Notes under the pieces: generated by a model
Databases searched by the model: none
Told to the model about the DNA's origin: nothing
Seen by the model: the letters and a program-made list of their open reading frames with translations, nothing else
Assembly: GCA_001179505.1 (NCBI GenBank)
Contig: CDMY01000703.1
Location: 1 to 28,924, forward strand
Direction of reading: 5' to 3'
Length of the DNA stretch: 28,924 nt
DNA from: Vitrella brassicaformis CCMP3155
Lineage: Eukaryota; Protista; Chromerida
Position numbers and translations under genes: made by a program
Shown here: positions 1,120-27,916 of the stretch, piece after piece
How the letters are laid out: the number at the start of each line of letters is the position of its first letter
How positions within the stretch are numbered: position 1 is the first letter of the stretch

Positions 1120-1419
1120 NNNNNNNNNNNNNNNNNNNNNNNNNNNNNNNNNNNNNNNNNNNNNNNNNNNNNNNNNNNNNNNNNNNNNNNNNNNNNNNNN
1201 NNNNNNNNNNNNNNNNNNNNNNNNNNNNNNNNNNNNNNNNNNNNNNNNNNNNNNNNNNNNNNNNNNNNNNNNNNNNNNNNNNNNNNNNNNNNNNNNNNNN
1301 NNNNNNNNNNNNNNNNNNNNNNNNNNNNNNNNNNNNNNNNNNNNNNNNNNNNNNNNNNNNNNNNNNNNNNNNNNNNNNNNNNNNNNNNNNNNNNNNNNNN
1401 NNNNNNNNNNNNNNNNNNN
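1120..1419. other. Assembly gap, 300 N
   Basis: Run of N. Confidence 1.
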
Positions 1420-7807: not shown

Positions 7808-10800
7808 CATACACACTCCAAGTCGACGCGTGCAGGCGCAGGTGTGCGCACAAAGGCATTCATCATATACACCCACTCCAAGTCGACGCGTATATGCGCA
7901 GGCATGCGCAGGTGTGCGCACAAAGACATTCATCATATACACACACTCCAAGTCCAAACGTGCATGCGCACGTGTGCGCACAGAGACAAGTCCAAACGTG
8001 CATGCGCAGGTGTGTGCACAGAGACATTCATCATATACACCCACTCCAAAGAGACATTCATCATATATACACACTCCAAGCCGACGCGTACATGCGCAGG
8101 CATGCGCAGGTGTGCGCACACAGACATTCATCATATATACACACTCCAAGTCCAAACGTCCATGCGCAGGTGTGCGCACAAAGACATTCATCATATCCAC
8201 ACGCTCCAAGTCCAAACGTGCATACGCAGGGGTGCGCACAGAGACATTCATCATATATACACACTCCAAGTCCAAACGTGCATGAACAGAAATGCGCAGG
8301 TGTGCGCACAAAGGCACTCATCATATACGCGCACAAAGACATTCATCATATACGCACACTCCAAGTCGACGCGTGCAGGCGCAGATGTACGCACAGAGAC
8401 ATTCATCATGTGCGCACACTGACATTCATCATATACACGCACTCCAAGTCCACACGTGCATGCGCAGGGGTGCGCACACTGACATTCATCATATACACAC
8501 ACTCCAAGTCCACACGTGCATGCGCAGGTGTGCGCAGGTGTGCGCATACAGACATTCATCATATACACACACTCCAAGTCCACACGTGCATGCGCAGGGG
8601 TGCGCACACTGACATTCATCATATACACGCACTCCAAGTCCACACGTGCATGCGCAGGTGTGCGCACGCAGACATTGGTCATATACACATACTCCAAGTC
8701 GACACGTGCATGCGCAGGTGTGCGCACACAGACATTCATCATATACACACTCCAAATCGACACGTGCATGCCCAGGGGTGCGCACGCAGACATTGGTCAT
8801 ATACACACACTCCAAGTCGACACGTGCATGCGCAGCTGTGCGCACGCAGACATTGGTCATATACACACACTCGAAGTCGACACGTGCATGCGCAGGGGTG
8901 CGCACACTGACATTCATCATATACACACACTCCAAGTGCACACGTGCATGCGCAGGTCGCACATAGACATTCCGGATACACGCATTCCAAGTCCACACGT
9001 GCATGCGCACGTGTGCGCACACAGACATTGGTCATATACACACACTCCAAGTCGACACGTGCATGCGCAGGTGTGCACATACAGACATTCATGATATACA
9101 CGCACTCCAAGTCGACACGTGCATGCGCAGGTGTGCGCACGCAGACATTCATCCGACACGCACACTTGAAGTCGACACGCACATAGACACATTCATCATA
9201 TCCATACACTCCAAGTCCAAATGTGCTATGCGCACATAGAGACATTCATTATATCCACACATTCCAAGTCCAAACGTGCATGCGCAAGTGTGCGCACAGA
9301 GACACATTTATAGTTGTGCGCACATAGACACAGTCATCATATTCACACACTCCAGGTCGACGCGTGCATACGCAGGTCTGCGCATATAGACACATTCATC
9401 ATATTCATACACTCCAGGTCGACGCATGCTATGCGCACAGAGACATTCATCATATACACACACTCCAAGTCCAAAAGTGCTATACGCACACAGACATTCA
9501 TCAGATACACACTCTCCAAGTCGACGCGTGCCTGCGCATGTGTGCGCACAGACATTGAATTGACGCGTGCATATGCAGGTATGCGAACAGAGACATTGGT
9601 CATATACACGCCCTCCAAGTCCACACGTGCATGCGCAGGTGTGCGCACAGAGACATTCATCCGACACGCACACTTGAAGTCGACACGTTCATGCGCAGGT
9701 GTGCGCACATAGACATTCATCATAAACGCACACTTGAAGTCGACACGTGGATGCACAGGGGTGCGCACACAGACATTCATGATATACGCGCACTCCAAGT
9801 CGACACGTGCATGCGCAGGTGTGCGCACACAGACATTCATCAATGCATGCACTCCAAGTCGCAGGTGTGCGCAGACAGACGTTCATCATATGCATACACT
9901 CCAAGTCGACACGTGCATGCGCAGGTGTGCGCACAGAGACATTCATCATATACCTACACTTGAAGTCGACACGTGCATGCGCAGGTGTGCGCACACAGAG
10001 ATATTCATCATAAACGCATACTTGAAGTCCAAACGTTCATGCGCAGGTGTGCACATTCCACGTCCAAACGTGCATGCGCAGGTGTGTGTGCAGAGACATT
10101 CATCACATACACACTACAAGTCCAAACGTGCATGCGCAGGTGTGCACATACAGACATTCAAACGTGCATGCGGAGATGTGCATACTGTGAAACGTGCATG
10201 CGGAGGTGTGCGCACACAGACATTCATCACATAAACACACTACAAGTCCAAACGTGCATACGCAGGTGTGCACACACAGACATTCAAACGTTCATGCGGA
10301 GGTGTGCACACACAGACATTCAAACGTGCACGCGGAGGTGTGCGCATATAGACATTCATCACATACACACACTACAAGTCCAAACGTGCATGCGCAGTCG
10401 TGCACACATAAACATTCAAACGTGCATGCGCAGGTGTGCGCACAGAGACATTCACCATATACACACACTCCACGTCCAGACGGGCCTGTGTGACATACGT
10501 TAACTCATAGCGCAACGGCAGGCAGAGTCTGTCGGTCTCTCATGAAATGAACTGCGTCAACATCGACCAACCCTCAATCATCCGACAAACATGCCAGCAC
10601 CATCCTCAGCGCCCGCCTGGCGTATCTTCCAGCGGCGCCGCCAAAAGGGCTGGAGGCCCTGCGAGCTCAGAAAGAGATGGTGCCACGTCCAGACGTGCAT
10701 GCGCAGGTGTGCACACTCCACGTCCAAACGTGTATGCGCAGAGCTGCGCACACAGACATTCATGATATACACCTACTCCAAGTCGACACGTGCATGCGCA

Positions 10801-11506
10801 GGGGTGCACACACAGACATTCAAACGTGCATGCGCAGGTGTGCGCACACAGACATTCATCATATACACACACTCCACATCCAAACGTGCATACGCAGGTG
10901 TGCACATTCCACGTCCAAACGTGCATGCGCAGGTGTGCACACACAGACATTCAAACGTGCATGCGCACACAGACATCCATCATATACACACACTCCACAT
11001 CCAAACGTGCATACGCAAGTGTGCACACTCCACGTCCAAACGTGTATACGCAGGTGTCCACGCATAGACATTCAAACGTGCATGCGCAGGTGTGTGCGTA
11101 GAGACATTCATCACATACACACTACAAGTCCAAACGTGCACACGCAGGTGTGCACACACAGACATTCAAACGTTCATGCGGAGGTGTGGGCACACAGACA
11201 TTGAAACATGTATGCGGAGGTGCACGCATACGACATTCATCATATACACACACTCCACGTCCAAACGTGCATGCGCAGGTGTGTGCGCAGAGACATTCAT
11301 CACAGAGACATTCATCACATACACACTACAAGTCCAAACGTGCATGCGCAGGTGTGCACACACAGACATTCAAACGTGCATGCGCAGCTGTGTGCGCAGA
11401 GACATTCATCACATACACACTACAAGTCCAAACGTGCATGCGCAGGTGTGTGCGCACAGACATTCAAACGTGCATGCGGAGGTGTGCGCACAGAGACATT
11501 CATATA
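7808..11506 (+). repeat. Tandem satellite array 1, ~60-bp unit
   Basis: Consensus GTGTGCGCACACAGACATTCATCATATACACACACTCCAAGTCGACACGTGCATGCGCAG, with variant and shortened (~35-bp) units. Confidence 0.95.
10483..10682. mobile_element. 200-bp non-satellite insertion flanked by a 13-bp direct repeat (TSD-like)
   Basis: CCACGTCCAGACG at 10470-10482 and 10683-10695; neighbouring units read CCACGTCCAAACG. Confidence 0.6.
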
Positions 11507-11951
11507 CATACACATGCATATACATTGTTTAAATGCGTATCTTCATTTGATGCCCCTCCCCTCTCCCTTCCTACCTATTTACACATCCATTCATACACAA
11601 ATCTGTACACATACACAGGCAGACAGAGCCAAATATACCAATACGTACACACAAAGAGTACCAACCTGTATGTACGACCATATATTGACTTTCGTGACCC
11701 ACTTGGCCCTACAGACACCTATAATCCCTCACTTAACACCAACAGCCTCATCAACCAACTCGAATGCTCTACGGGGGGAAACATTATAAGAACCGCACAG
11801 TGATGCAATACAGCCAGTCATCTGAGGAGGAGAAGGACAAATGGTGGAGGTCAATGAACGCAGGAGAGAGCGAAAGAGGATCCTAACCAGTTGCCCAACG
11901 CGAGGGGCTTTAATGACGTCCACATTTTTCAAACATGTGAAGCAACAGTAG

Positions 11952-12205
11952 GCCCATCGACTACAAGTGTATGCATTGCTTACATCTATCCATTGTGTAC
12001 CAGACTAGATTGCTATGTTAAGTGCGACATGGCTCCATTTGTAAGATATAATGACAACATTTCCCTTTCATCCTCATCTGACAAGACGACTCATCGCATC
12101 CTCATGCTGATGACATTATCGTTTACTGCATCAATTAGCTCTTCGATGGTGGGCAAACCATCTCTGCACATTGACTATTCGCTGAGACATGGACGTGCTA
12201 AGATG
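11952..12205. repeat. Diverged duplicate, copy 1 (pairs with 12917-13169)
   Basis: Shared blocks GCCCATCGACTACAA, ACAAGACGACTCATCGCATCCTCATGCTGATGACAT and CTCTTCGATGGTGGGCAAACCAT. Confidence 0.85.
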
Positions 12206-12256
12206 AGACCTATGGATTCTCCATGTGGGTGTGTAATCTCATCCAGGTGCAACGAG

Positions 12257-12556
12257 NNNNNNNNNNNNNNNNNNNNNNNNNNNNNNNNNNNNNNNNNNNN
12301 NNNNNNNNNNNNNNNNNNNNNNNNNNNNNNNNNNNNNNNNNNNNNNNNNNNNNNNNNNNNNNNNNNNNNNNNNNNNNNNNNNNNNNNNNNNNNNNNNNNN
12401 NNNNNNNNNNNNNNNNNNNNNNNNNNNNNNNNNNNNNNNNNNNNNNNNNNNNNNNNNNNNNNNNNNNNNNNNNNNNNNNNNNNNNNNNNNNNNNNNNNNN
12501 NNNNNNNNNNNNNNNNNNNNNNNNNNNNNNNNNNNNNNNNNNNNNNNNNNNNNNNN
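12257..12556. other. Assembly gap, 300 N
   Basis: Run of N. Confidence 1.
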
Positions 12557-12667
12557 GCGCATGGACCAGTCGACTTGGAGGGTATGTTCATGATGAATGC
12601 CTCTATGCGCACATTTACGTATGCATGCGTGGACTTGGAGAGTGTGTATGTGATGAATGTCTCTCTG
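12557..12667 (-). repeat. About two degenerate satellite units in reverse orientation
   Basis: GTCGACTTGGAG...ATGATGAATG and GTGGACTTGGAGAGTGTGTATGTGATGAATGTC match the reverse complement of the unit. Confidence 0.85.
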
Positions 12668-12916
12668 GAGAAGGATACGGCAGCCTGGGCAGGCGACGAG
12701 GGCGGCGGGTGTGCTGAGTCGGCGGCTGATCGGTGAAGGCTGCAGCGTGGGGGTTACCGCAGGTCCCCCGGCTCCCCAAATGTAGGAGGGAACGTGCGAT
12801 CGGTAGCCTGAGCGAGACGCACAACGCAATGCCGGCAACATTGGAGAGTGGCAAAGGCTTCCGGGGGTGGCCTCGCGACAGGGATGGCCACGCCGTCGTG
12901 TCATGGCCAACAGCAT

Positions 12917-13169
12917 GCCCATCGACTACAAACCTATATGTTGCTTACATCTATTCATTATATCCCTCATAGGCTGTTATATTCAGTGCGACACGGCTCC
13001 ATTTGTGAGATATACTAGCAACATTTCCCCTTCATCCTCATTTAACAAGACGACTCATCGCATCCTCATGCTGATGACATCATCGTGTACTTCTTCGATT
13101 ACCTCTTCGATGGTGGGCAAACCATTTCTGTACGTTGACTATTCGCTGAGCTATGGACATGCTAATATG
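12917..13169. repeat. Diverged duplicate, copy 2 (pairs with 11952-12205)
   Basis: Same shared blocks as copy 1; offset about 965. Confidence 0.85.
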
Positions 13170-13483
13170 TATTACCTATGTGTACGGGTGTGTTACGTCA
13201 TTTAGGTGCTACGAGAGAAGAATTGGAAGTGTTTTGATGTGATTGGATGAGACGCTGAGAGAATTCGTCAAATGGCTGATGGATTGGTTGAAGAAGAATA
13301 ATCTGTATGCTTCCACATGTCCATCCAAGTATTTCTTGTCTACACGTACATCCATGTAATCTCTGACTCACATCCGCTCCCTCATTATAACGGCTTAAGG
13401 GCCCCCTGATGGCGTGTATGTGTATGTATGGAAATGCGAAGAACGCACATACATCCTAACAGAAAACATCGCCAACCGATTCG

Positions 13484-13783
13484 NNNNNNNNNNNNNNNNN
13501 NNNNNNNNNNNNNNNNNNNNNNNNNNNNNNNNNNNNNNNNNNNNNNNNNNNNNNNNNNNNNNNNNNNNNNNNNNNNNNNNNNNNNNNNNNNNNNNNNNNN
13601 NNNNNNNNNNNNNNNNNNNNNNNNNNNNNNNNNNNNNNNNNNNNNNNNNNNNNNNNNNNNNNNNNNNNNNNNNNNNNNNNNNNNNNNNNNNNNNNNNNNN
13701 NNNNNNNNNNNNNNNNNNNNNNNNNNNNNNNNNNNNNNNNNNNNNNNNNNNNNNNNNNNNNNNNNNNNNNNNNNNNNNNNNNN
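13484..13783. other. Assembly gap, 300 N, with overlapping flanks
   Basis: ACAGAAAACATCGCCAACCGATTCG occurs on both sides (13459-13483 and 13785-13809). Confidence 0.95.
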
Positions 13784-14604
13784 TACAGAAAACATCGCCA
13801 ACCGATTCGACGAATGCAGCAAAAATACGCTGCGATGCTCGAATGCTTTTTTCTACACACCGTCCTCCACTTGCTATCCCCAGGCTCCCATCCGTCGACG
13901 AGAGGCAGTCGCTAACATCCGACGATGAAGTCTACGTCTTAAAACATGATACACTGTATGTATACAGGAATTCGTGCATAAATATGTCTAAGTCACCTTC
14001 CCTCCTTTCCTTCCCATCTCTCAGTCGATTCGAGTAACTGCCTTAATGTCCTATGCACCTAAAAAGGCCAGGTGCGTACGTACATCCTGCTGTAATTTAC
14101 ACACAGCGCCTTCTCCTCCCTCCTCCATCTTACCTACCATGATGCCATACATACACATCTCTAGCATCTACGATGTCTAACAAATGCTGAAGACGATCTC
14201 CAGCAGCCGACTCCCCATCTAAGATTGACACATATATCCAAAATTGACATAATGTGTATCTAAAGTGAAGGGCCCTCACTAACAAACCGTTGCCAGAAAA
14301 CTCCACGTACCAAGGCAAGAGTAAAAGAGAGCACAGTACAGTCCTTACACCTATAAATAAATCTGACTCTCCCCTCCCCTCCCCTCCCTTCTTCAATGAA
14401 ACACAAATAATACGTGAATTTAGGAAATGAACGCCAAAAGTCACAGTAAATCAACATACGTGCTATGGTGCTTAAACTCGAAAACTCACTTAAATCACAG
14501 TGACCGCTGCTCGCTCCACCGTTGCCCTTAGGTGAGGTACATTTGCACTTCACCATCAACGGCACACAGTCACTCACTTGTCTCTGAGTTCCTTCTCTGT
14601 CTTT

Positions 14605-14715
14605 CTCCGTGTGTCGTGTCATTTTTTGCGTGTGTCATTTTCTGTGTGTGTGTGTGCTCGGTGTGTGTGTGTGCCGTGTCATTTTTAGGGTTTTGTGTCG
14701 TTTTCGGTGTGCGTC
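14605..14715. repeat. GT-rich low-complexity tract with repeated GTGTCATTTT motif
   Basis: (GT)n runs and three GTGTCATTTT motifs. Confidence 0.7.
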
Positions 14716-15699
14716 TCATTGTCGGTACGTGCGATTGCAGCAGTCGATGTTTTCGTCCGTTGTATGCATCGGTGGATCTGTGGTTAGCTGAGGGGTGTTT
14801 TGTGTGGCCTGTGTGTTCGCCTAGCAACGTCGTTTCGCTCCCGACACTGGGGAGCGGAGAGGTGTCTATGAGCGACCATCCTGGACACACACATCTCGCT
14901 CATCTTTGAAGTGGGGCTGCTCCTGGCTGGCCAAACGTTTGCACCGACTGGATGCGTGAAGTTCTATATGTGTGGGTGCACCACCAGCATGACACGGACG
15001 TCACCAGGGGTGCTAGATGCTAACCCCAGATAGACTCCCGCCTTGGTGGCTTCCGTGTCGTGCTCGTGACTTCCACATGTACCGCCGTCTTCCGTCTCGC
15101 CTTTGCAGATCTGCCTGGCTGCGCGGGGCAGTCCCCCTTGCGTGCTTGTTTCATGTTTGCTCCTTTGTTTCTTGCGTGTTGAATGGACATTGGGACTCGG
15201 CCAGAGGCCACCCACCGCACCACCTAGGGCCTCGCGTGAAACCGCTGCTTCCGGTGAAACCGCAGTTCGGCGAGCTTTCCAAGAGGCAGATCTGGTGAGA
15301 AGCTGTCTTCCCTGAGCAGTCCGCGCCACTCAGTCGATATTATACCGCCTTTCACCTCAACAGCACCCATGCCACGCGTCACTCACCTCCAGGCTCCTGT
15401 TCAGCATCGAAGGCAGCCTGAGGCTGTTTACTCGAGGGGCTTGGGGTTCAGAGAGGCAGATGAGCTAGGAGAGGCCGTCAACCTCCTCATCAGTCGAGCA
15501 GCGAGGGCCGTCACATGCTTGGTCGACTCGCTTACCGCGCTGCTGGTCATCGTGCTTCATCTCGGTGGCGCAATGGTCGACAGCGACAACTCAATCACAT
15601 TAGGCGACCTCATCTTCCTCCCTGTGGACCTGCTGTATGCTGTGCTTGGCATTATTGGTGAGCCTGAGTGAAGGAGGGCCGGGAGACTGACTGGGCTAG

Positions 15700-16839
15700 C
15701 ATCTGTACTCCTGTGAGATCTGCATCCAGGCAAAAAGCACACAGCTGCCTCCTGCTGCTGACTGTGAGGAGTCGCCTGAGTGCACGCGACCTTTCGAATT
15801 GGTGCGCACAGACATCTGTGGCCCGATGCCGAACTCGTCGCCAGGCGGCTTTCAGTACTTCATCACGCACACGGATGAATACACCAAGATGGTGGCGGTG
15901 TACATGCTCAGAACCCGAAATGAGTCGGCAGCTGCGCTGAGGCGGCTGTGCGGCGAATGGGGCAAGACACCTGAAACAATCAGATCAGATTGGGCTCAAG
16001 AGCTCTCTGCTGGTTCGTTTGAGCAAGAGTGTATAGATAGGGGCATCAAACGTCAGTTTAGTGCGCCCTACACACCTCGTGAGAATGGTGTCGCCGAGCC
16101 AATGAACCGCACACTCTTGGAGAAAGGGACGGCCATACTCCTTCGTCATGGCATCACCACGGCCTTCTGGCCGTTTGCCATCGACACAGCGGCATATCTG
16201 AGGAACAGAATGCCAACGGAGAGCCTCTCAGAGGACAAAACGCCATATGAGATGTGGCATGGCCGCCGGCCTTACCTGGGCCATGTGCGTGTGTGGGGCT
16301 GTCTTGGCTATGTCCATGTGCGGAAGCCCTTCAGAGCACACAAGTTTGCGGCCAGGGCAGTTCCCATGCTGCTGATAGGCTACGATGGTCGAACCAAGGA
16401 TGCCTATCGCATGTGGAACCCCAAAACAAGACGCGTCATCATCTCGCGTGATGTTCGTTTCCTCGAGAAGCGCACCTGGCATCGACGGCTCGTGCCGGCC
16501 AGCTGGAAGGCCACCCATCGACTCGGTGAACCTCTCCAGGCCCGCCCTGAGCTTGTCGACGACCACGCGCAAAGAGGGGATGGACTGGCCGACTTAGCGC
16601 ACCAATCGGCTCGAAGAGGGGATGTGATAGTCAACCCTGAGAGCGACCCGATTGTTGCTGAGAAGCCAGAGATAAGAGATGTTGAGCCCGATGAGGTGGA
16701 GGAGATGGGTGACCTCGATCAGCAAGGCCATGTGCAGGCAGGCGGGGATGAGTCGTTCGATGGGCCGAGTGGGGCAGGCGACGTCCAAATGGACGGGCAG
16801 TCGAGAGCCAGCAACTCAGAGCACGACCACATGATGTAG
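15700..16839 (+). pseudogene. Copia integrase
   Basis: CEIC (CxxC of the HHCC finger), PFELVRTDICGP, IRSDWAQE, PYTPRENGVAE, FWPFAIDTAAYLRNR, TPYEMWHG, LIGYD...YRMW, ISRDVRF. Confidence 0.92.
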
Positions 16840-17339
16840 ATGGGATGGATGCCAACCCGGCATCAGGCCCAGCAGCCCCCCAGCCGAGCGATGCAGAGAT
16901 GGAACTCATGCCGATCGATGAGGGCGAGATGGCTCTCGACCGACGAGCACCACCAGCCCCTCCGCCATGGCGCTCTGGACGCGAAAAGCTGATACCACGA
17001 CGCTTGTACGAGGACCATCTATTCGATGTCCGTGCTGTGCAGGTCGGTGTGGTGAGTGGACCGGTTGTCGTACGTCTGTGTGGGGATAAGGAGACAGGAA
17101 GGGGCCGGGTGGATGCGAAGAGGGGAGGCGAGGGCTGCCATTGCCTGGCAGTGAAGGCCTCACGATGCATGTGCAATGCTGGAAGGACCTCTGACGCACC
17201 ACCAGACTGGTCACACCTGGTCACACAGCAGTCGAGACAGAGAAGTGCTGGCAAGAGACGCTCCCGTGGCCGTGCGGGTGGTCTACCTGACCTGTTTGTG
17301 AATGCATTCAGCGTCAAGGCAGGACCAATGGCCGACACC

Positions 17340-18586
17340 GTCTATCAGCCTAAAACATGTTAGGAAGCCCGCGAAGGGCCTGAGTGTGAGGGCTGGATAG
17401 AGGCAATGGACAAGGAGCATCAAGCCATGCACGATTTGGGTGTGTTTGAGTACGTCTTACGTGAGGAGGCGGATGGACGAGTGATCCAGGCCAAATGGGT
17501 CTTCAAACAGAAGCCCGACAGGAAGAAAGCGCGATTGGTCGCCAAAGGCTTCCAACAGCGGCTAAGACCTGACGAAGAGACGTATGCACCTACGATGTCT
17601 GGACAGGCTGTCCGTACCTTTCTGGCGGCTGTGTTGAAGAAAGGGTGGTCGATGCGTCAGCGGGACGTGAACACCGCTTTCCTCAACGCGCCACTGGACA
17701 CTCCTGTGTACATGGAGTGCCCAGAAGGATACGAGAAGCCTGGTCATGTCATTCGACTGCGGAAGGCCCTGTATGGGCTGAGGGCGGCGCCGAGAGCATG
17801 GAATCAGCTGCTGATACAGTCGCTGAGGGCCATGGGCTTCGAGCCACTCGACGCTGATCCCTGCATCTTCACACACAAGACACGACAGCTATGGTTGGGT
17901 GTGGTTGTCGATGACATTGTCTATGCTGGGTGCGATGCTGACCTCGATTGGTTCTTGGGAGGAAATCGGCCAACGATTTGCCATCAAGGATCTCGGCGAA
18001 GTCGACACCTTCGTAGGCATTAAGATCAAATACGACAAAGAGAAGGGAGAGATGACACTCTCGCAAGAGAAGTACATCTCTAGCCTGCTCACCAAGTTCC
18101 GAATGGAGCGAGCCAACCCAGCCATGACGCCGTTGCCACCAGNNNNNNNNNNNNNNNNNNNNNNNNNNNNNNNNNNNNNNNNNNNNNNNNNNNNNNNNNN
18201 NNNNNNNNNNNNNNNNNNNNNNNNNNNNNNNNNNNNNNNNNNNNNNNNNNNNNNNNNNNNNNNNNNNNNNNNNNNNNNNNNNNNNNNNNNNNNNNNNNNN
18301 NNNNNNNNNNNNNNNNNNNNNNNNNNNNNNNNNNNNNNNNNNNNNNNNNNNNNNNNNNNNNNNNNNNNNNNNNNNNNNNNNNNNNNNNNNNNNNNNNNNN
18401 NNNNNNNNNNNNNNNNNNNNNNNNNNNNNNNNNNNNNNNNNNGCAATCACAGTGAGACCAGACATTGCCTATGCATGCAAGGAACTGACCAAGTTCTTTT
18501 CGTGCTGGGGCAAGACTCACTTCAAGTATGCGTGCCATGTGCTTCGGTATCTGAAAGGGACCGCTGGGCGAGGATTGGTCTTCAAG
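17340..18586 (+). pseudogene. Copia reverse transcriptase (RVT_2-like), spans a gap
   Basis: W..AMDKE, KWVFKQK, KARLVAKGFQQ, ETYAP, QRDVNTAFLNA, LRKALYGLRAAPRAWN, VVDD, IKDLG, LSQEKY, RPDIAYA, VLRYLKGT. Confidence 0.92.
18143..18442. other. Assembly gap, 300 N, inside RT
   Basis: Run of N between TPLPP and AITVRPDI. Confidence 1.
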
Positions 18587-18805
18587 CGAAAGGCCACTGA
18601 CGATGTGTTGCATTGCCCCCATTGTGGTGTGCGCCATGAGGAGCCACCAGAAGGCAAGCACATCATCATGGCTGGCACGAGAAGAATCGATCTGCACAAA
18701 CCACACCGCATACACATATGCCATGAGTGCGGCAACCATTGGGATGAAGGCCGACCTACTCTTGGGCGCATACCTGGCCACGAAGATGACGAGAATACCG
18801 CGGCG

Positions 18806-19368
18806 CTCGTCGCCTATGCGGATGCGTCATGGGCCGACCAGGAGAACGCCAGGAGCACCGGTGGCTTCGTCATCCAGATGGATGGATGCCCGATCGCGTG
18901 GTCGAGCAGAACGCAGTCGATTGTGGCCCTGAGTAGCACAGAATCAGAGTACATCGCTGCAAGTGACTGCACTCGTGAGCTGCTGTACCTGATGCAAGTG
19001 ATGGAGGGGCTGGGCTTCAGGGTGCCACCCACAGTCCTGTATGGCGACAACGATGGTTGCATACAGAACATCAAGAACCATCAGGCCTCAAAGAAGACGA
19101 GGCATGTTGCTATCAAGTACCATCATGTGCGCACACTTACCAGGACGGGAAGATAAGGCCCGAGTACGTGCCGTCGAAGGAGAATGTTGCTGATCTCCTG
19201 ACGAAGTCGCTCCCTGCCTCACAGCACGCGAAGTTCACGTGCATGGTGACGAGAGGAGCCGACGCCATCACTCTCAGCAACGATGGGCTGACGACAGAAC
19301 CTGAAAGGCAGAAGAGAAAGCGTCAGACATCAAAGAGTGATAGCACAAAGAGGCGCAAGGTGGACTAG
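18806..19368 (+). pseudogene. Copia RNase H plus basic C-terminal extension
   Basis: YADASWA, RSTGG, IAWSSRTQSIVALSSTESEY, YGDN, KHVAIKYHHVR-like, 1-nt frameshift near 19138, ENVADLLTK. Stop at 19366-19368. Confidence 0.92.
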
Positions 19369-19606
19369 GGAAGCAGAGAGTCCCACAGTGCTGTGTAGTG
19401 TGTGTGACTGACCCATCGAGTGGGAGATAGACACACGAGGCACCGCTCCTGCTTCCAGATGGAACCGTTCATTGGTGGGTTGGCTCGGTTGCCGTCCTCC
19501 GACTGTCCAACAGCCGCACACGAATGGAAGAGCGAGCCAGAATCCAACCCCTGGGTTTGGGGTCCAGGGTTTGGCCTAGGGCTCCGAGATTCCTAGCGCT
19601 GTGTGC

Positions 19607-19615
19607 GAAGAGGGG
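19607..19615 (+). other. Polypurine tract (PPT)
   Basis: GAAGAGGGG immediately before TGTTGCGGAA; identical in the second copy. Confidence 0.8.
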
Positions 19616-19826
19616 TGTTGCGGAATGTGTACGCCCACAGCTGGACAGAGGCGTCTGTACACGGAGCGCATGTAGGCCCGTGGCCTAAGTAGATCCATAG
19701 ATCTGCCCAATCAGAGTCAGGGCGATCACTGCTTCACGTGCAAAAGACTCTTGCGTGTTCCGTGAAGGCTCCTTGTGCTTGGTGTGCGTTAGCCGATATC
19801 TCGCTTGACCACTGCGTTACGCAACT
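19616..19826 (+). repeat. 3' LTR, 211 bp, TGTTGCGGAA...TTACGCAACT
   Basis: Starts right after the PPT and has an imperfect terminal inverted repeat (8/10). The end is defined by loss of homology with the copy at 28338-28547. Confidence 0.85.
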
Positions 19827-20270
19827 ACATCGTCACTTCTAGTTTGGTGCGAGCTTGAAGGGTGCGATATTGGGTATCTCTCAGAGCGATCGCGGTGAAA
19901 TCCGAGTTGTGGGTCTGCTCTCGGAGAGGGCGGTCTCCGTCAGTCCTATCAGATTTGCGATCAGAGATACCATCCGGCTTCTGCATCTCTCTTGCAAACC
20001 AACATAATCCAGCGAAGAGCACGTCGGGTTGATCCTTCAGAGCGAACCAGCGTTTCGACTGCATCAAGTGGTCAAGCGACGAGATCCAGCAGGTATGATA
20101 TGAGCAGTAGCGCATCTTGGACACTGCAGGGAGGACCAAAACGGAGCGCCAGGCATCTCGTAAGTTGTTGAGATGTCATGCTTTCGTACTTTCTGCAGAT
20201 TCTTCTCCCTCCTGAACACCTCACCCCAGCCTTGCAGAGCCCAGCCGCCTACCGCGCGCCAGTCGCGAGG

Positions 20271-20492
20271 ATGACCCGAGGTTCATCGTCAGGTCGGCCG
20301 AGACTGAATTTCTTTCTTTTCGTTGTCGTTGCTTTGATGGCCGTGGCGGTACCTCATCATGCGGCCAACTATTGTGGAACCTCCTGGTCTAATGCCCAAT
20401 TCTTGTGCGACCGACAGTGCCCTTCCGGCAAGGATGCCCAGTGCGACATGGAGGCTGGTCAGAAATGCTACGCGGATATTCAATGCCCGTAG
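20271..20492 (+). CDS. Small putative secreted 6-cysteine peptide (73 aa)
   Basis: MTRGSSSGRPRLN-FFLFVVVALMAVAV (signal-peptide-like), then NYCGTSWSNAQFLCDRQCPSGKDAQCDMEAGQKCYADIQCP*. The start could lie upstream because there is an acceptor-like TTCTGCAG at about 20191-20198. Confidence 0.55.
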   Translation: MTRGSSSGRPRLNFFLFVVVALMAVAVPHHAANYCGTSWSNAQFLCDRQCPSGKDAQCDMEAGQKCYADIQCP

Positions 20493-21003
20493 CTGGGATG
20501 CGGTTTGTGGTTGAGGTGCATAGGTGGATGGCTCCATGGTTTTAGTTCTTCTGTGGGGGGCTTTTTTTTTGGGCAAATACCACCGACAGGACAGTGCGAC
20601 GTTTTACTGATGATCGAAGAAGAGGGGCCCAAACAGATAAGGGATGATGAGCGTGGTCAGTCAGCAGTGTACACAGCTTCTCACCAAAAACACTGTCTCT
20701 GACCCTATCGGTGGGGTACAAGACAAAACATCAAGCGAAATAATGACTTCGAGAGGTACAGGATGGTCAGTCACTTGGGGAGGAAGGGGGACCTCGCAGT
20801 GTGTGCCTTGGGTATAAGAATGAAGGAGGTGCATTCACACTTTAGAAGTACGGACCGAACAGACCAAAGCAAACGACGAGTACGACAGACTATATCATCT
20901 TTCCCCAAGCAAGGCAGACGCTAAAGTCAGAAGGCTAAGCAGGCTGGCGGTTTGGAGGAGGCGCAGCGCAAAGAGGAGCGCGAGGACTATCCCTGAAGCT
21001 CAC

Positions 21004-21393
21004 TTCCGCCTCCGCCGACCACCCAGCGAAGTGGATGGCAATGAAGGCGATGATCGCCAGAGAACTCAGAAAATCGATCACGTTCCCAAATGTTGGTGCC
21101 CACACATACCGACAGCACACAAATGGAGCCCCCAGCACGCAGCTTGACGCACCATGAGTCTTCCCAGTACGCTGCCTTCAGTCTGATGCCCTGCACACAT
21201 AGAGACGATGACACATGTTGTTGATCAGTGAGGTATGTCTTCTCTGATCTGTCGCACTTGGACGATCTCCATCAAGATGAAGCCACCTCCCGTCAGCACT
21301 GCGCCCCAGAGCCACACCGACGGCCACACCCACGCCATAATCATGCCGCTGTCTCCCTTGCTGGACTCGATGTGCAGCAGCACAAAGGCCACC
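21004..21393 (-). pseudogene. Three-exon fragment of a TRP-like / ion-transport channel (S2-S3 region)
   Basis: Exons 21393-21258, 21190-21153 and 21085-21004 splice to ...LWGAVLTGGGFILMEIVQ-GIRLKAAYWEDSW-NVIDFLSSLAIIAFIAIHFAGW. This matches the E..Q....YW.D.WN.ID pattern of TRP-type channels. One acceptor reads GG rather than AG. Confidence 0.55.
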
Positions 21394-21457
21394 CTGCGAC
21401 ACACAGACATGCCATGTGTCTCGCTGTCTTGATCGTTGTGATGGCTGCAGCCTCATT

Positions 21458-24110
21458 CAGAGACATTAATCATATAGACACGCTCCAGTCCATACGTGCA
21501 TGCGCAGGTGTGCGCACACAGACATTCATCATATCCATACGTGGATGCGCAGGTGTGCGCATGCAGACATTCATATACACACACTCCAAGTCCAAACGTG
21601 GATGCGCAGGTGTGCGCACATAGACATTCACTATATACACGCACTTCAAGTCGAAACGTGTATGTGCAGGGGTGCGCACAGAGACATTCATGAGATACCC
21701 ACACTACAAGTCGACACGTGCATGCGCAGGTGTGCGCACACAGACATTCATGATGATATACCCGCACTCCAAGTCCAAACGTGCATGCGCAGGTGTGCGC
21801 ACACAGACATTCATTATATACACGCACTTCAAGTCGACACGTGCATGCGCAGAGGTGCGCACACAGACATTCATCATATACACACACTTTTATTCTATAC
21901 ACACACTCCAAGTCCGCAGGGGTGCGCACACAGACATTCATCATATACACACACTCCCATATACACACACTCCAAGTCGACACGTGTATGCGCAGGGGTG
22001 CGCACACAGAGGTTCATTATGTATGCGCAGGGGTGCGCACACACACATTCATTATATACACACACACCAAGTCCGCAGAGGTGCGCACACAGACATTCCT
22101 CATATACACGCACTTCAAGTCGACACGTGCATGCGCAGAGGTGCGCACACAGAGGTTCATCATGTACACACACTCCAAGTCGACACGTGCATGCGCAGGG
22201 GTGCGCACACAGACGTTCATTATATACACACTCCAACTCCGCAGGGGTGCGCACACAGACATTAATTATATACACGCACTTCAAGTCGACACGTGCATGC
22301 GCAGGTGTGCGCACACAGAGGTTCATTATATATACACACACCAAGTCCACACGTGCATGCGCAGGGGTGCGTAAATAGACGTTCATCATATACACACACT
22401 CCAAGTCGACACGTGCATGCGCAGGGGTGCGCACACAGAGGTTCATGATGATATACACGCACTCCAAATCCAAACGTGCATGCGCACGTGCATGCGCAGG
22501 TGTGCGCACACAGACATTCATGATATAGACACACTCCAAGTTCAAACGTGCATGCGCAGCTGTGCGCATACAGACATTCATGACATAAACACACTTCAAG
22601 TCAATATAGACACACTTCAAGTCGACACGTGCATGCGCAGGTGTGCGCACACAGACATTCATTATATACACGCACTTCAAGTCGACACGTGCATGCGCAG
22701 AGGTGCGCACACAGACATTCATTACATACACCCCCTCCAACTCCAAGCGTGCATGCGCAGGTGTGCGCACAGTGACATTCATTACCGAAGGCTTCGGTTG
22801 CAATGGATCCCTTCCCAAGACGCAAACAAAGAGATGTGAGTCAAATACGAGTGTGTTTGAGGCACGTCTGACCTTCCCTGGTTTTAGTGTGGAGCAAATA
22901 CACACCAAGTCCACACATGCATGCCCAGGGGTGCGCACACAGACATTCATTATATACACACACACCAAGTCCAAACGTGCATGTGCAGGAATGCGCACAC
23001 ACCCTTCAAGTCGACACGTGCATGCGCAGGGGTGCGCACACACACGTTCATCATATACACACACTCCAAGTCGACAGGGCTGCGCACACACATATTCATT
23101 ACATACACACACACCAAGTCCACACATGCATGCCCAGGGGTGCGCACATAGACATTCATTATACACACACACACCAAGTCGACACGAGCATGCGCAGGCG
23201 TGCGCGCACACAGACATTCATTATATACATACACTCCAAGTCGACACGTGCATGCGCAGGGGTGCGCACACAGACATTCATTATATACACACACTCCAAG
23301 TCGACACGTGCATGCGCCGGGATGCGCAGGGGTGCGCATACATACATTCGTCATATACAAAAACACCCAGTCGACACGTGCATGCGCAGGGCTGTGCACA
23401 CACGCACCAACTCGACATGTGCATGCGCATTGATGCCTATACAAACATTCATTGTATACACACACTCCAGGTCGACACGTGCATGCGCAGGGGTGCGCAC
23501 ACAGACATTCCTTATACACACACACTGAGTCCAAACCTGCATGCGCAGGGGTGCGCACACACACGTTCATTATATACAAACACACCATTATATACAAATA
23601 CACACCAAGTCGACACGTGCATGCGCAGGGGTTCGCAGACAGACGTTCATTATATATACACAAACTCAGTCCAAACGTGCATGCGCAGGGGTGCGCACAC
23701 AGGCATTCATTATACACACACACTGAGTCCAAATTTGCATGCGCAGGGGTGCGCACACACACGTTCATTATATACAACACACCATTATATACAAATACAC
23801 ACCAAGTCGACACGTGCATGCGCAGGGGTGCGCAGACAGACATTCATCATATACATACACACACTCGCATGTGCAGGGGTGCGCAGGCACACGTTCATTA
23901 TATACATACACACCAAGTCGACACGTGCATGCGCAGGGGGGCTACAGACATTCATTATATACACACACTCCAAGTCGACACGTGCATGAGCATGGATGCG
24001 CACAAACACATTCATCATCTACACACACTCCAAGTCGACACGTGCATGCGCATGGGTGCGCACAGAGACATTTATTATATACACACACTCCAAGTCGACA
24101 CGTGCATGAG
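21458..24110 (+). repeat. Satellite array 2, block A (same 60-bp family)
   Basis: Same consensus as array 1, with CATTCATTAT and GCAGGGGTGC variants. Confidence 0.95.
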
Positions 24111-27616: not shown

Positions 27617-27916
27617 NNNNNNNNNNNNNNNNNNNNNNNNNNNNNNNNNNNNNNNNNNNNNNNNNNNNNNNNNNNNNNNNNNNNNNNNNNNNNNNNNNNN
27701 NNNNNNNNNNNNNNNNNNNNNNNNNNNNNNNNNNNNNNNNNNNNNNNNNNNNNNNNNNNNNNNNNNNNNNNNNNNNNNNNNNNNNNNNNNNNNNNNNNNN
27801 NNNNNNNNNNNNNNNNNNNNNNNNNNNNNNNNNNNNNNNNNNNNNNNNNNNNNNNNNNNNNNNNNNNNNNNNNNNNNNNNNNNNNNNNNNNNNNNNNNNN
27901 NNNNNNNNNNNNNNNN
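27617..27916. other. Assembly gap, 300 N
   Basis: Run of N. Confidence 1.

What the first reader, a model, noticed from the sequence alone, without database searches (positions are those of the whole stretch)
18587..18805. Extra ~73-aa Cys/His (zinc-binding-like) domain inserted between Copia RT and RNase H
Seen: between RYLKGTAGRGLVFK and LVAYADASWA lies RKATDDVLHCPHCGVRHEEPPEGKHIIMAGTRRIDLHKPHRIHICHECGNHWDEGRPTLGRIPGHEDDENTAA, in frame and free of stops. It has CxxC-x3-H...H-x2-H-x-CxxC-x3-W. Known: in Ty1/Copia Pol this tether is only about 10 residues and has no metal-binding domain. From memory, and unverified, a similar LxCPxCGxxH...PHRxHxCxxCGxxW spacing occurs in uncharacterised bacterial or phage proteins. 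Inference: a Copia lineage that captured a Zn-ribbon module within RT-RNase H, possibly for nucleic-acid or host-protein binding. This is the most novel-looking element in the window.
Basis: partly seen in the sequence, partly recalled or inferred. Interest (0 to 1): 0.78.

Follow-up and report, generated by a model that had tools for sequence, protein, structure and literature searches.

The report
Movable zinc-ribbon module in Copia Pol
A jumping gene (Copia type) of a chromerid alga carries an extra, conserved, small zinc-binding-type domain that related copies hold at three different places in the same protein and that is kin to an unnamed module of bacterial virus proteins; what it does is not yet known.

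Summary
Window 18587-18805 (+) encodes 73 stop-free residues between the RT tail and RNase H of a decayed Ty1/Copia element. Other Copia families of this genome have only 8-25 residues there.

It is a real domain, not an intron or junk.
- The 58-aa core (18602-18775) occurs in about 17 Copia copies of this 72.7-Mb genome at 33-99% identity.
- C5, C8, C40, C43, H38, E14, P34, G55 and P58 are invariant.
- dN/dS is 0.19-0.26, like RNase H (0.17).
- AlphaFold2 gives a confident all-beta zinc ribbon (pLDDT 81.5).

The main new result is that the module changes place. It lies between protease and integrase in two families, between integrase and RT in three, and between RT and RNase H in two. In other eukaryotic contigs it follows RNase H. 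On an RT tree all module-bearing families form one clade (95/94). That fits one gain followed by moves inside Pol.

It has no Pfam or NCBIfam family.

Function is inferred only: a self-contained binding module, most likely for nucleic acid.

The parts
18587..18805 (+).
   Evidence: Translation. An alignment with module-less Copia families shows about 63 extra residues.
18602..18775 (+). 58-aa conserved core of the zinc-ribbon module (DVLHCPHC...PTLGRIP). Putative Zn ligands are C5, C8, C40 and C43. H38, E14, P34, G55 and P58 are also invariant.
   Evidence: Alignment A1; profile match at E 1.2e-26; AF2 core pLDDT about 90 with four beta strands; dN/dS 0.26 against the C359 copy.
17400..18142 (+). 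Reverse transcriptase (RVT_2), broken by a frameshift near 17990 and cut off by the N gap
   Evidence: Pfam RVT_2 E 1.8e-33 on 17400-18020; six-frame view.
18143..18442 (.). 300-N gap inside RT (assembly gap or withheld stretch)
18443..18586 (+). C-terminal tail of RT (ITVRPDIAYACKEL...RYLKGTAGRGLVFK) leading into the tether
   Evidence: aligns with the RT tails of other Copia families.
18806..19150 (+). Copia RNase H (LVAYADASW...), followed by a frameshift near 19150; the Pol C-terminus continues in another frame to about 19260
   Evidence: dN/dS 0.17 against C359.
15700..16836 (+). Integrase core (rve) plus SH3-like domain of the same element, upstream of RT (Copia order)
   Evidence: Pfam rve E 2.2e-9 and SH3_retrovirus E 3.4e-25.

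Best explanation
The insert is a genuine, selected, self-folding Cys4 zinc-ribbon domain with a core of about 58 aa. It is carried inside the Pol polyprotein of one clade of Ty1/Copia retrotransposons of a chromerid alga. Earlier notes call the genome Vitrella type.

The domain belongs to an unnamed family with the signature CPxC-x3-H-x-[ED] ... PH-x2-H-x-C-x2-C-x3-[WF] ... P-x-[LV]-G. The family is also found in mosaic early proteins of proteobacterial prophages and phages, and as small stand-alone proteins.

Within the Copia clade the module always sits in a flexible, non-conserved linker, but the linker differs by family: PR|IN, IN|RT or RT|RH (this window). In other eukaryotic contigs it follows RH. 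The likeliest history is one gain followed by moves inside Pol, for example by template switching between co-packaged RNAs.

The module works whatever its neighbours are. Its key residues are the same in bacteria and in an alveolate. I therefore infer that it is an autonomous binding (tethering) module. It would hold Pol, or a processed Pol product, on a ligand common to both worlds, most likely nucleic acid (template RNA, cDNA or target DNA). I do not think it is an enzyme.

Shown here: presence, conservation, purifying selection, predicted fold, homology to the phage module, variable position, one RT clade.
Inferred: zinc binding, binding function, nature of the ligand, mechanism of relocation.
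For: - Sequence and frame.
- About 17 full copies and 3 fragments in the genome; every copy whose flanks could be mapped lies in a Copia Pol frame.
- Invariant C5, C8, C40, C43, H38, E14, P34, G55 and P58 at 33-71% identity.
- dN/dS 0.19-0.26 between diverged lineages, against 0.17 for RNase H and 0.14 for the RT tail.
- AF2 mean pLDDT 81.5, core about 90, four strands, no helix.
- Positions mapped by Pfam and tblastn. PR|ZnR|preIN: C6, C659, C778, C806, C508, C475, and C846/C284. IN-SH3|ZnR|RT: C791, C275, C511/C1018. RT|ZnR|RH: C703, C902, C736, C359.
- N-free loci or frames show each arrangement: C275 (one uninterrupted 1055-aa frame), C659, C736.
- The module follows RNase H in P0006 and related proteins.
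- RT tree: module-bearing families are one clade, UFboot 95 / SH-aLRT 94.
- Homology to the bacterial and phage module: 75 hits in 1.84 billion proteins; hhalign 98.3%, E 1.9e-14 over 54 of 58 columns; phrog_14118. The two best BFVD fold matches are Burkholderia phages BcepF1 and Maja, probability about 1.0; tblastn on phage records agrees.
- In bacteria it is fused to many unrelated domains, as an adaptor would be.
- Gag keeps its own CCHC knuckle, so the module does not replace nucleocapsid.
Against: - No experiment or solved relative shows what any member binds. The phage relatives are all 'hypothetical'.
- The module is not markedly basic (my count on the sequences). This is weak evidence against nucleic-acid binding.
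- The conserved H12, E/D14, H35 and H38 could form a second metal site or an active site. I could not inspect coordinates.
- The tree inside the clade is unresolved, so several gains within the clade are not excluded.
- Transcription and retention in mRNA were not tested.
- The window copy itself is dead.
Confidence: 0.6

Rival explanations
1. It is a host-protein docking or integration-targeting domain. The ribbon would bind a chromatin or nuclear host factor and steer Pol/IN, as chromodomains do in chromoviruses and CoDi-I Copia elements.
For: In about 13 of 17 copies the module directly flanks integrase, at PR|IN or IN|RT. Extra targeting domains are the best-known kind of Pol add-on (PMC5348765). 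The net charge is near neutral, from the sequences.
Against: In the window family the module is separated from IN by RT, and elsewhere it follows RNase H. The same key residues are kept in bacterial and phage proteins, where no eukaryotic host factor exists.
Confidence: 0.2
2. It is a counter-defence module. Like early phage accessory proteins, it would neutralise a host silencing or restriction factor.
For: The bacterial relatives sit in early-gene blocks of phages and in mosaic prophage proteins. Two of 28 are fused to the Lar restriction-alleviation domain.
Against: This is guilt by association only. No member has a known anti-defence activity, and there is no PADLOC or anti-defence evidence. 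Bacterial and algal defence systems share few targets.
Confidence: 0.08
3. It is a small metal-dependent enzyme or nuclease (His-Me/HNH-like) that uses the conserved H-x-E and PH-x2-H residues.
For: H12, E/D14, H35 and H38 are conserved from bacteria to the alga, beyond the four Cys.
Against: AF2 shows four strands and no helix, so it is not a beta-beta-alpha-metal fold. Foldseek and VIA-align find only generic zinc ribbons and no nuclease. The His after the second CxxC is not conserved.
Confidence: 0.04
4. It is not a protein domain: an unspliced intron, a nested small mobile element, or neutral linker filler.
For: It lies in a linker that tolerates length change. The window copy is a dead element.
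Against: It is in frame and stop-free in all the full copies. dN/dS is 0.19-0.26 with dS up to about 2. There are no flanking target-site duplications or terminal repeats. The only GT...AG pair I read near the edges spans 188 nt, which is not a multiple of three. The automatic gene models P0002 and P0036 keep it as coding sequence. It is homologous to bacterial proteins.
Confidence: 0.03

Closest known systems
Unnamed zinc-ribbon module of prophage/phage early proteins (N-terminal ~60 aa of phrog_14118; Burkholderia phage BcepF1 gp044 C-terminus; phage Maja gp081; prophage proteins of Burkholderiales, Sphingomonadales, Acidobacteriota, Planctomycetota)
   Same: Same signature: CPxC-x3-H-x-[DE], then PH-x2-H-x-CxxC-x3-W, then P-T-x-G. 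hhalign gives 98.3%, E 1.9e-14. These are the best predicted-structure matches. In both settings it is a portable module joined to unrelated partners.
   Different: The bacterial type has an NPPHRSH insert and a WRPADVPTNGV tail, and forms a tight separate clade. It sits in phage accessory proteins, not in a retroelement polyprotein. hmmscan of the window module alone against PHROGs finds nothing. Function is unknown in both.
Accessory domains captured by LTR-retrotransposon or retroviral Pol (chromodomain of chromoviruses and Copia CoDi-I; archaeal-type RNase H of Tat/Chronos/Archon; dUTPase of retroviruses)
   Same: It is an extra, non-core domain added to Pol and kept by selection. As with retroviral dUTPase (my knowledge), its place in Pol differs between lineages.
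   Different: Fold and family differ. The known cases are explained as independent captures by distant lineages (PMC5348765). Here closely related families of one clade hold the same module in different linkers.
Generic zinc ribbons (TFIIS/Rpb9 C-ribbon, ribosomal eL43/L37ae, LysW, ZifS)
   Same: Two CxxC knuckles on beta hairpins in an all-beta domain of about 50 aa. These are the top, though non-significant, PDB fold matches.
   Different: No significant sequence or fold match: best Foldseek E 0.41, best VIA Z 2.0. The extra conserved His, Glu and Trp residues and the PxLGxIP tail are particular to this family.
Retroelement zinc motifs: Gag CCHC knuckle and integrase N-terminal HHCC domain
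   Same: They are Cys/His metal-binding motifs inside LTR-retrotransposon proteins.
   Different: These elements have both canonical motifs elsewhere: CCHC at CDICGMSNHSTGEC, and HHCC in the pre-integrase region. The spacing of the new module fits neither.

Membership tests
Ty1/Copia LTR retrotransposon (host element) | RVT_2-type reverse transcriptase | tested here: met
   PF07727 E 1.8e-33 on window 17400-18020; E 4.5e-46 on the sister copy C902.
Ty1/Copia LTR retrotransposon (host element) | Domain order PR - IN - RT - RNase H (integrase upstream of RT) | tested here: met
   rve and SH3 lie at 15784-16479, RT at 17466 onward, RNase H at 18806-19150. Full order is seen in sister families.
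Ty1/Copia LTR retrotransposon (host element) | Flanking long terminal repeats | tested here: inconclusive
   No LTR pair was found in 10000-24000. Only a 200-nt pair at 12006/12970 (87%) appeared, and N gaps and satellite arrays obscure the ends.
Zinc ribbon fold | Two CxxC knuckles carried by beta hairpins, all-beta small domain | tested here: met
   C5, C8, C40 and C43 are invariant. The AF2 model has four strands and core pLDDT about 90. Only sub-threshold Pfam zinc-ribbon hits.
Zinc ribbon fold | Binds one Zn(II) through the four Cys | not testable with these tools
   Needs metal analysis of the purified domain.
Phage/prophage module of phrog_14118 type | Significant profile similarity over the whole module | tested here: met
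   hhalign of A1 against A3: 98.3%, E 1.9e-14, 54 of 58 columns. hmmsearch of the Vitrella profile finds bacterial members at E 1e-6 to 1e-3 in a library of 1.84e9 proteins. BFVD fold matches have probability about 1.0.
Phage/prophage module of phrog_14118 type | Direct match of the window sequence to the PHROG model | tested here: not met
   hmmscan of the 73 aa against PHROGs returns no family at E <= 0.01. The link is at superfamily level only.
HNH / His-Me finger nuclease | Beta-beta-alpha-metal fold with a catalytic His and a metal-binding Asn/His on a helix | tested here: not met
   No helix in the model. No nuclease among the fold matches. No Pfam HNH hit.
Integrase N-terminal HHCC zinc domain (duplicate) | H-x3-7-H-x23-32-C-x2-C spacing | tested here: not met
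   The module has H-x2-H-x-C-x2-C. The true HHCC motif is present separately in gag_pre-integrs.
Spliceosomal intron | No codon-level constraint; removed from mRNA | tested here: not met
   dN/dS is 0.19-0.26 and the frame is kept in all the full copies. Splicing itself was not tested, as no RNA data were at hand.

The most novel reading that the evidence does not exclude
A portable zinc-ribbon shared with phage early proteins was transferred between phage or bacterial genomes and alveolate Copia retrotransposons (direction open). It has since hopped between the linkers of Pol within one clade. It would serve as a plug-in adaptor that gives the element a new ability, such as target choice, evasion of host silencing, or template holding. 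That would be a new class of Pol accessory domain and a rare case of intragenic domain relocation in a retroelement.
Probability: 0.2. Interest if true: 0.8.

Novelty: new variant of a known kind. Interest (0 to 1): 0.6.

Why it matters
Pol add-ons such as chromodomains, extra RNase H and dUTPase have each shown how retroelements choose targets or cope with the host. This is an add-on of an undescribed family.

It is kept under selection as strong as that on RNase H. It is shared with phage early proteins. It sits in three or four different linkers among close relatives. That gives a natural experiment on how position-independent modules work in a polyprotein.

It also gives a first handle on a widespread bacterial and phage zinc-ribbon with no known function. 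That module was found in 48 genomes of several phyla.

It is a useful marker for classifying chromerid and other alveolate Copia lineages.

Tried and rejected
- Pfam, NCBIfam and PHROGs on the module gave only sub-threshold generic zinc-ribbon hits.
- A PDB sequence profile search found nothing below E 0.27.
- Foldseek against the PDB gave a best E of 0.41, all generic ribbons.
- VIA-align wide gave a best Z of 2.0.
- The ESM Atlas gave only unnamed small proteins, which was uninformative.
- The intron reading was rejected on dN/dS and frame.
- The nested mobile insertion was rejected because there are no TSDs or TIRs.
- The HNH reading and the IN-HHCC duplicate reading were rejected on fold and spacing.
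- Replacement of the Gag knuckle was rejected because CCHC is present.
- A module tree (66 columns) could not resolve the order of moves or the direction of transfer. The bacterial type is one tight clade and the eukaryotic modules are an unresolved grade.
- The source organisms of the non-Vitrella eukaryotic hits could not be named.
- No LTRs were found for the window copy.

Full report
**Observation.** The host is a decayed Ty1/Copia element.
- rve and the SH3-like domain lie at 15784-16479.
- RVT_2 starts at 17466.
- An RNase H-like stretch lies at 18806-19150.
- This copy is broken. A 300-N gap (18143-18442) lies inside RT, and there are frameshifts near 17990 and 19150.
- In module-less or differently built Copia families of the same genome, the RT-RNase H tether is 8-25 residues. 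About 63 residues are therefore extra here.

**The genome.** The window is contig C703 of a 72.7-Mb, 1064-contig assembly. Earlier notes of this scan call it a chromerid alga of the Vitrella type. I did not test that. One earlier first-reader note (s1-235870) reports the same kind of insert on another piece of this genome, presumably one of the sister copies below.

**It is a conserved domain.**
- A search of the whole genome with the 73 aa, and then with a profile, found about 17 full copies and 3 fragments. Every full copy whose flanks could be mapped lies in a Copia Pol frame.
- The common core is 58 aa (window 18602-18775).
- C5, C8, E14, L31, P34, H38, C40, C43, G55 and P58 are invariant at 33-71% pairwise identity. 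The flanks do not align between families.
- Between diverged lineages dN/dS of the module is 0.19-0.26 (dS 0.9-2.1). RNase H gives 0.17 and the RT tail 0.14 for the same pair.
- No target-site duplication or terminal repeat flanks it.
- The only GT...AG pair I read near the edges spans 188 nt, which is not a multiple of three.
- I therefore reject the intron, nested-element and filler readings.

**Fold.** AlphaFold2 was run on a 21-row alignment.
- Mean pLDDT is 81.5, with the core near 90. The model has four beta strands and no helix.
- Foldseek against the PDB gave only generic zinc ribbons, none significant.
- VIA-align against 48,161 chains gave nothing above Z 2.
- A PDB sequence profile search was empty.
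- Pfam and NCBIfam gave only sub-threshold zinc-ribbon hits.

**The module changes place.** Pfam and tblastn mapping of each copy gave three arrangements.

| Arrangement | Contigs |
|---|---|
| PR, module, pre-integrase | C6, C659, C778, C806, C508, C475 (one family); C846, C284 (a second family) |
| IN-SH3, module, RT | C791; C275; C511/C1018 (three families) |
| RT, module, RNase H | C703 (window), C902, C736 (92-98% DNA identity); C359 (about 70% aa) |

- The fragment at C592 has the module next to pre-integrase, as in the first arrangement.
- N-free loci or frames show each arrangement: C659, C275 (one uninterrupted 1055-aa frame) and C736. Misassembly therefore does not explain it.
- About 45 RVT_2-bearing copies exist in the genome, and roughly a third carry the module.
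- On an RT tree, all module-bearing families form one clade (UFboot 95, SH-aLRT 94) apart from the module-less families. Positions are mixed and unresolved inside that clade.
- The simplest history is one gain and at least two moves within Pol. Several gains inside the clade are not excluded.

**Relatives elsewhere.** A profile search of 1.84 billion representative proteins gave 75 hits at E <= 0.001. They fall into four groups.
1. Gene models of this alga.
2. Copia-like fragments from other GC-rich eukaryotic contigs. The module lies after PR (P0008), upstream of RT (P0011, P0041), or after RNase H at the Pol C-terminus (P0006, P0007, P0010, P0013, P0015). This is a fourth position.
3. Stand-alone proteins of about 69 aa, and a fusion to DHFR.
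4. Many bacterial proteins with the near-invariant string PIDMVLHCPxCGxQHIDAPE...WxNPPHRSHLCHGCGHIWRPADVPTNGV.

The bacterial proteins of group 4 were characterised further.
- They match phrog_14118, which has no known function.
- They occur in Burkholderia phages BcepF1, Maja, vB_E192a and Karil-Mokiny-1, inside blocks of small early genes.
- They occur in 48 genomes of Burkholderiales, Sphingomonadales, Acidobacteriota, Planctomycetota and others.
- In those genomes the module is joined to unrelated partners, including Lar restriction-alleviation and DUF551 domains.
- Profile-profile comparison of the algal and bacterial sets gives 98.3%, E 1.9e-14 over 54 of 58 columns.
- The two best predicted viral structures are the BcepF1 and Maja proteins.
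- A module tree cannot give the direction of transfer.

**How it most likely works.**
- Shown: a folded, selected, position-independent module in disordered linkers.
- Inferred: it binds zinc through the four Cys and acts as an autonomous tether.
- Its key residues are shared by bacteria and an alveolate, so a universal ligand such as nucleic acid is my first choice. A lineage-specific host protein is less likely.
- The near-neutral charge, and the frequent position next to integrase, keep a host-factor or targeting role alive.
- A counter-defence role rests only on the phage context.
- A catalytic role is unlikely on fold.
- Gag keeps its CCHC knuckle, so the module does not substitute for nucleocapsid.

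**Novelty.** Full-text searches found no description of such a domain in Copia or in chromerid or dinoflagellate elements. Known Pol add-ons are chromodomains and archaeal-type RNase H, explained as independent captures (PMC5348765). I rate this a new variant of a known kind: a Copia clade with an undescribed, relocating accessory domain from an unnamed family.

**Limits.**
- Flanks of only 1.5 kb were available for most copies.
- No RNA data were available.
- The source organisms of the outside eukaryotic hits are unknown.

Noticed in passing
window 8000-12000 and 21400-24000: Arrays of a satellite of about 60 nt (30 or more copies at 60-93% identity) flank the Copia remnant on both sides. 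Their base skew is opposite to that of the element, so the element appears to lie inside a satellite block.
   Followed up: partly
window 1120-1419, 12257-12556, 13484-13783, 18143-18442, 27617-27916: There are five runs of exactly 300 N. One cuts the RT of the element studied. An AT-rich stretch (GC 0.31-0.37) lies at 12000-14000.
   Followed up: no
proteins P0014, P0021, P0032, P0033 (metagenomic, bacterial-looking): These proteins carry two or three short-loop variants of the same ribbon, alternating with a repeated beta-rich domain. They give sub-threshold NCBIfam hits to ECs_2282_CxxC and to IS1/IS1595 N-terminal zinc-binding domains.
   Followed up: partly
L049 (Logan SRR22824304), protein P0041: This 1405-aa frame has the module upstream of a very divergent RVT_2 and RNase H. 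Its first 400 residues are unexplained. An SPPCTAYS stretch recalls DNA-methyltransferase motif IV (from memory), but Pfam did not confirm it.
   Followed up: partly
L099 (Burkholderia phage BcepF1, gp044) and P0039: In phages and bacteria the module is fused to enzymes. It forms the C-terminus of a 388-aa protein annotated as sulfatase-modifying factor enzyme, and the N-terminus of a dihydrofolate reductase.
   Followed up: partly
G000 contigs C520:230156-230266, C77:34656-34718, C592:48891-49015: These are isolated or frameshifted fragments of the module (one with an internal TGA). They are probably remnants of decayed Copia copies.
   Followed up: partly
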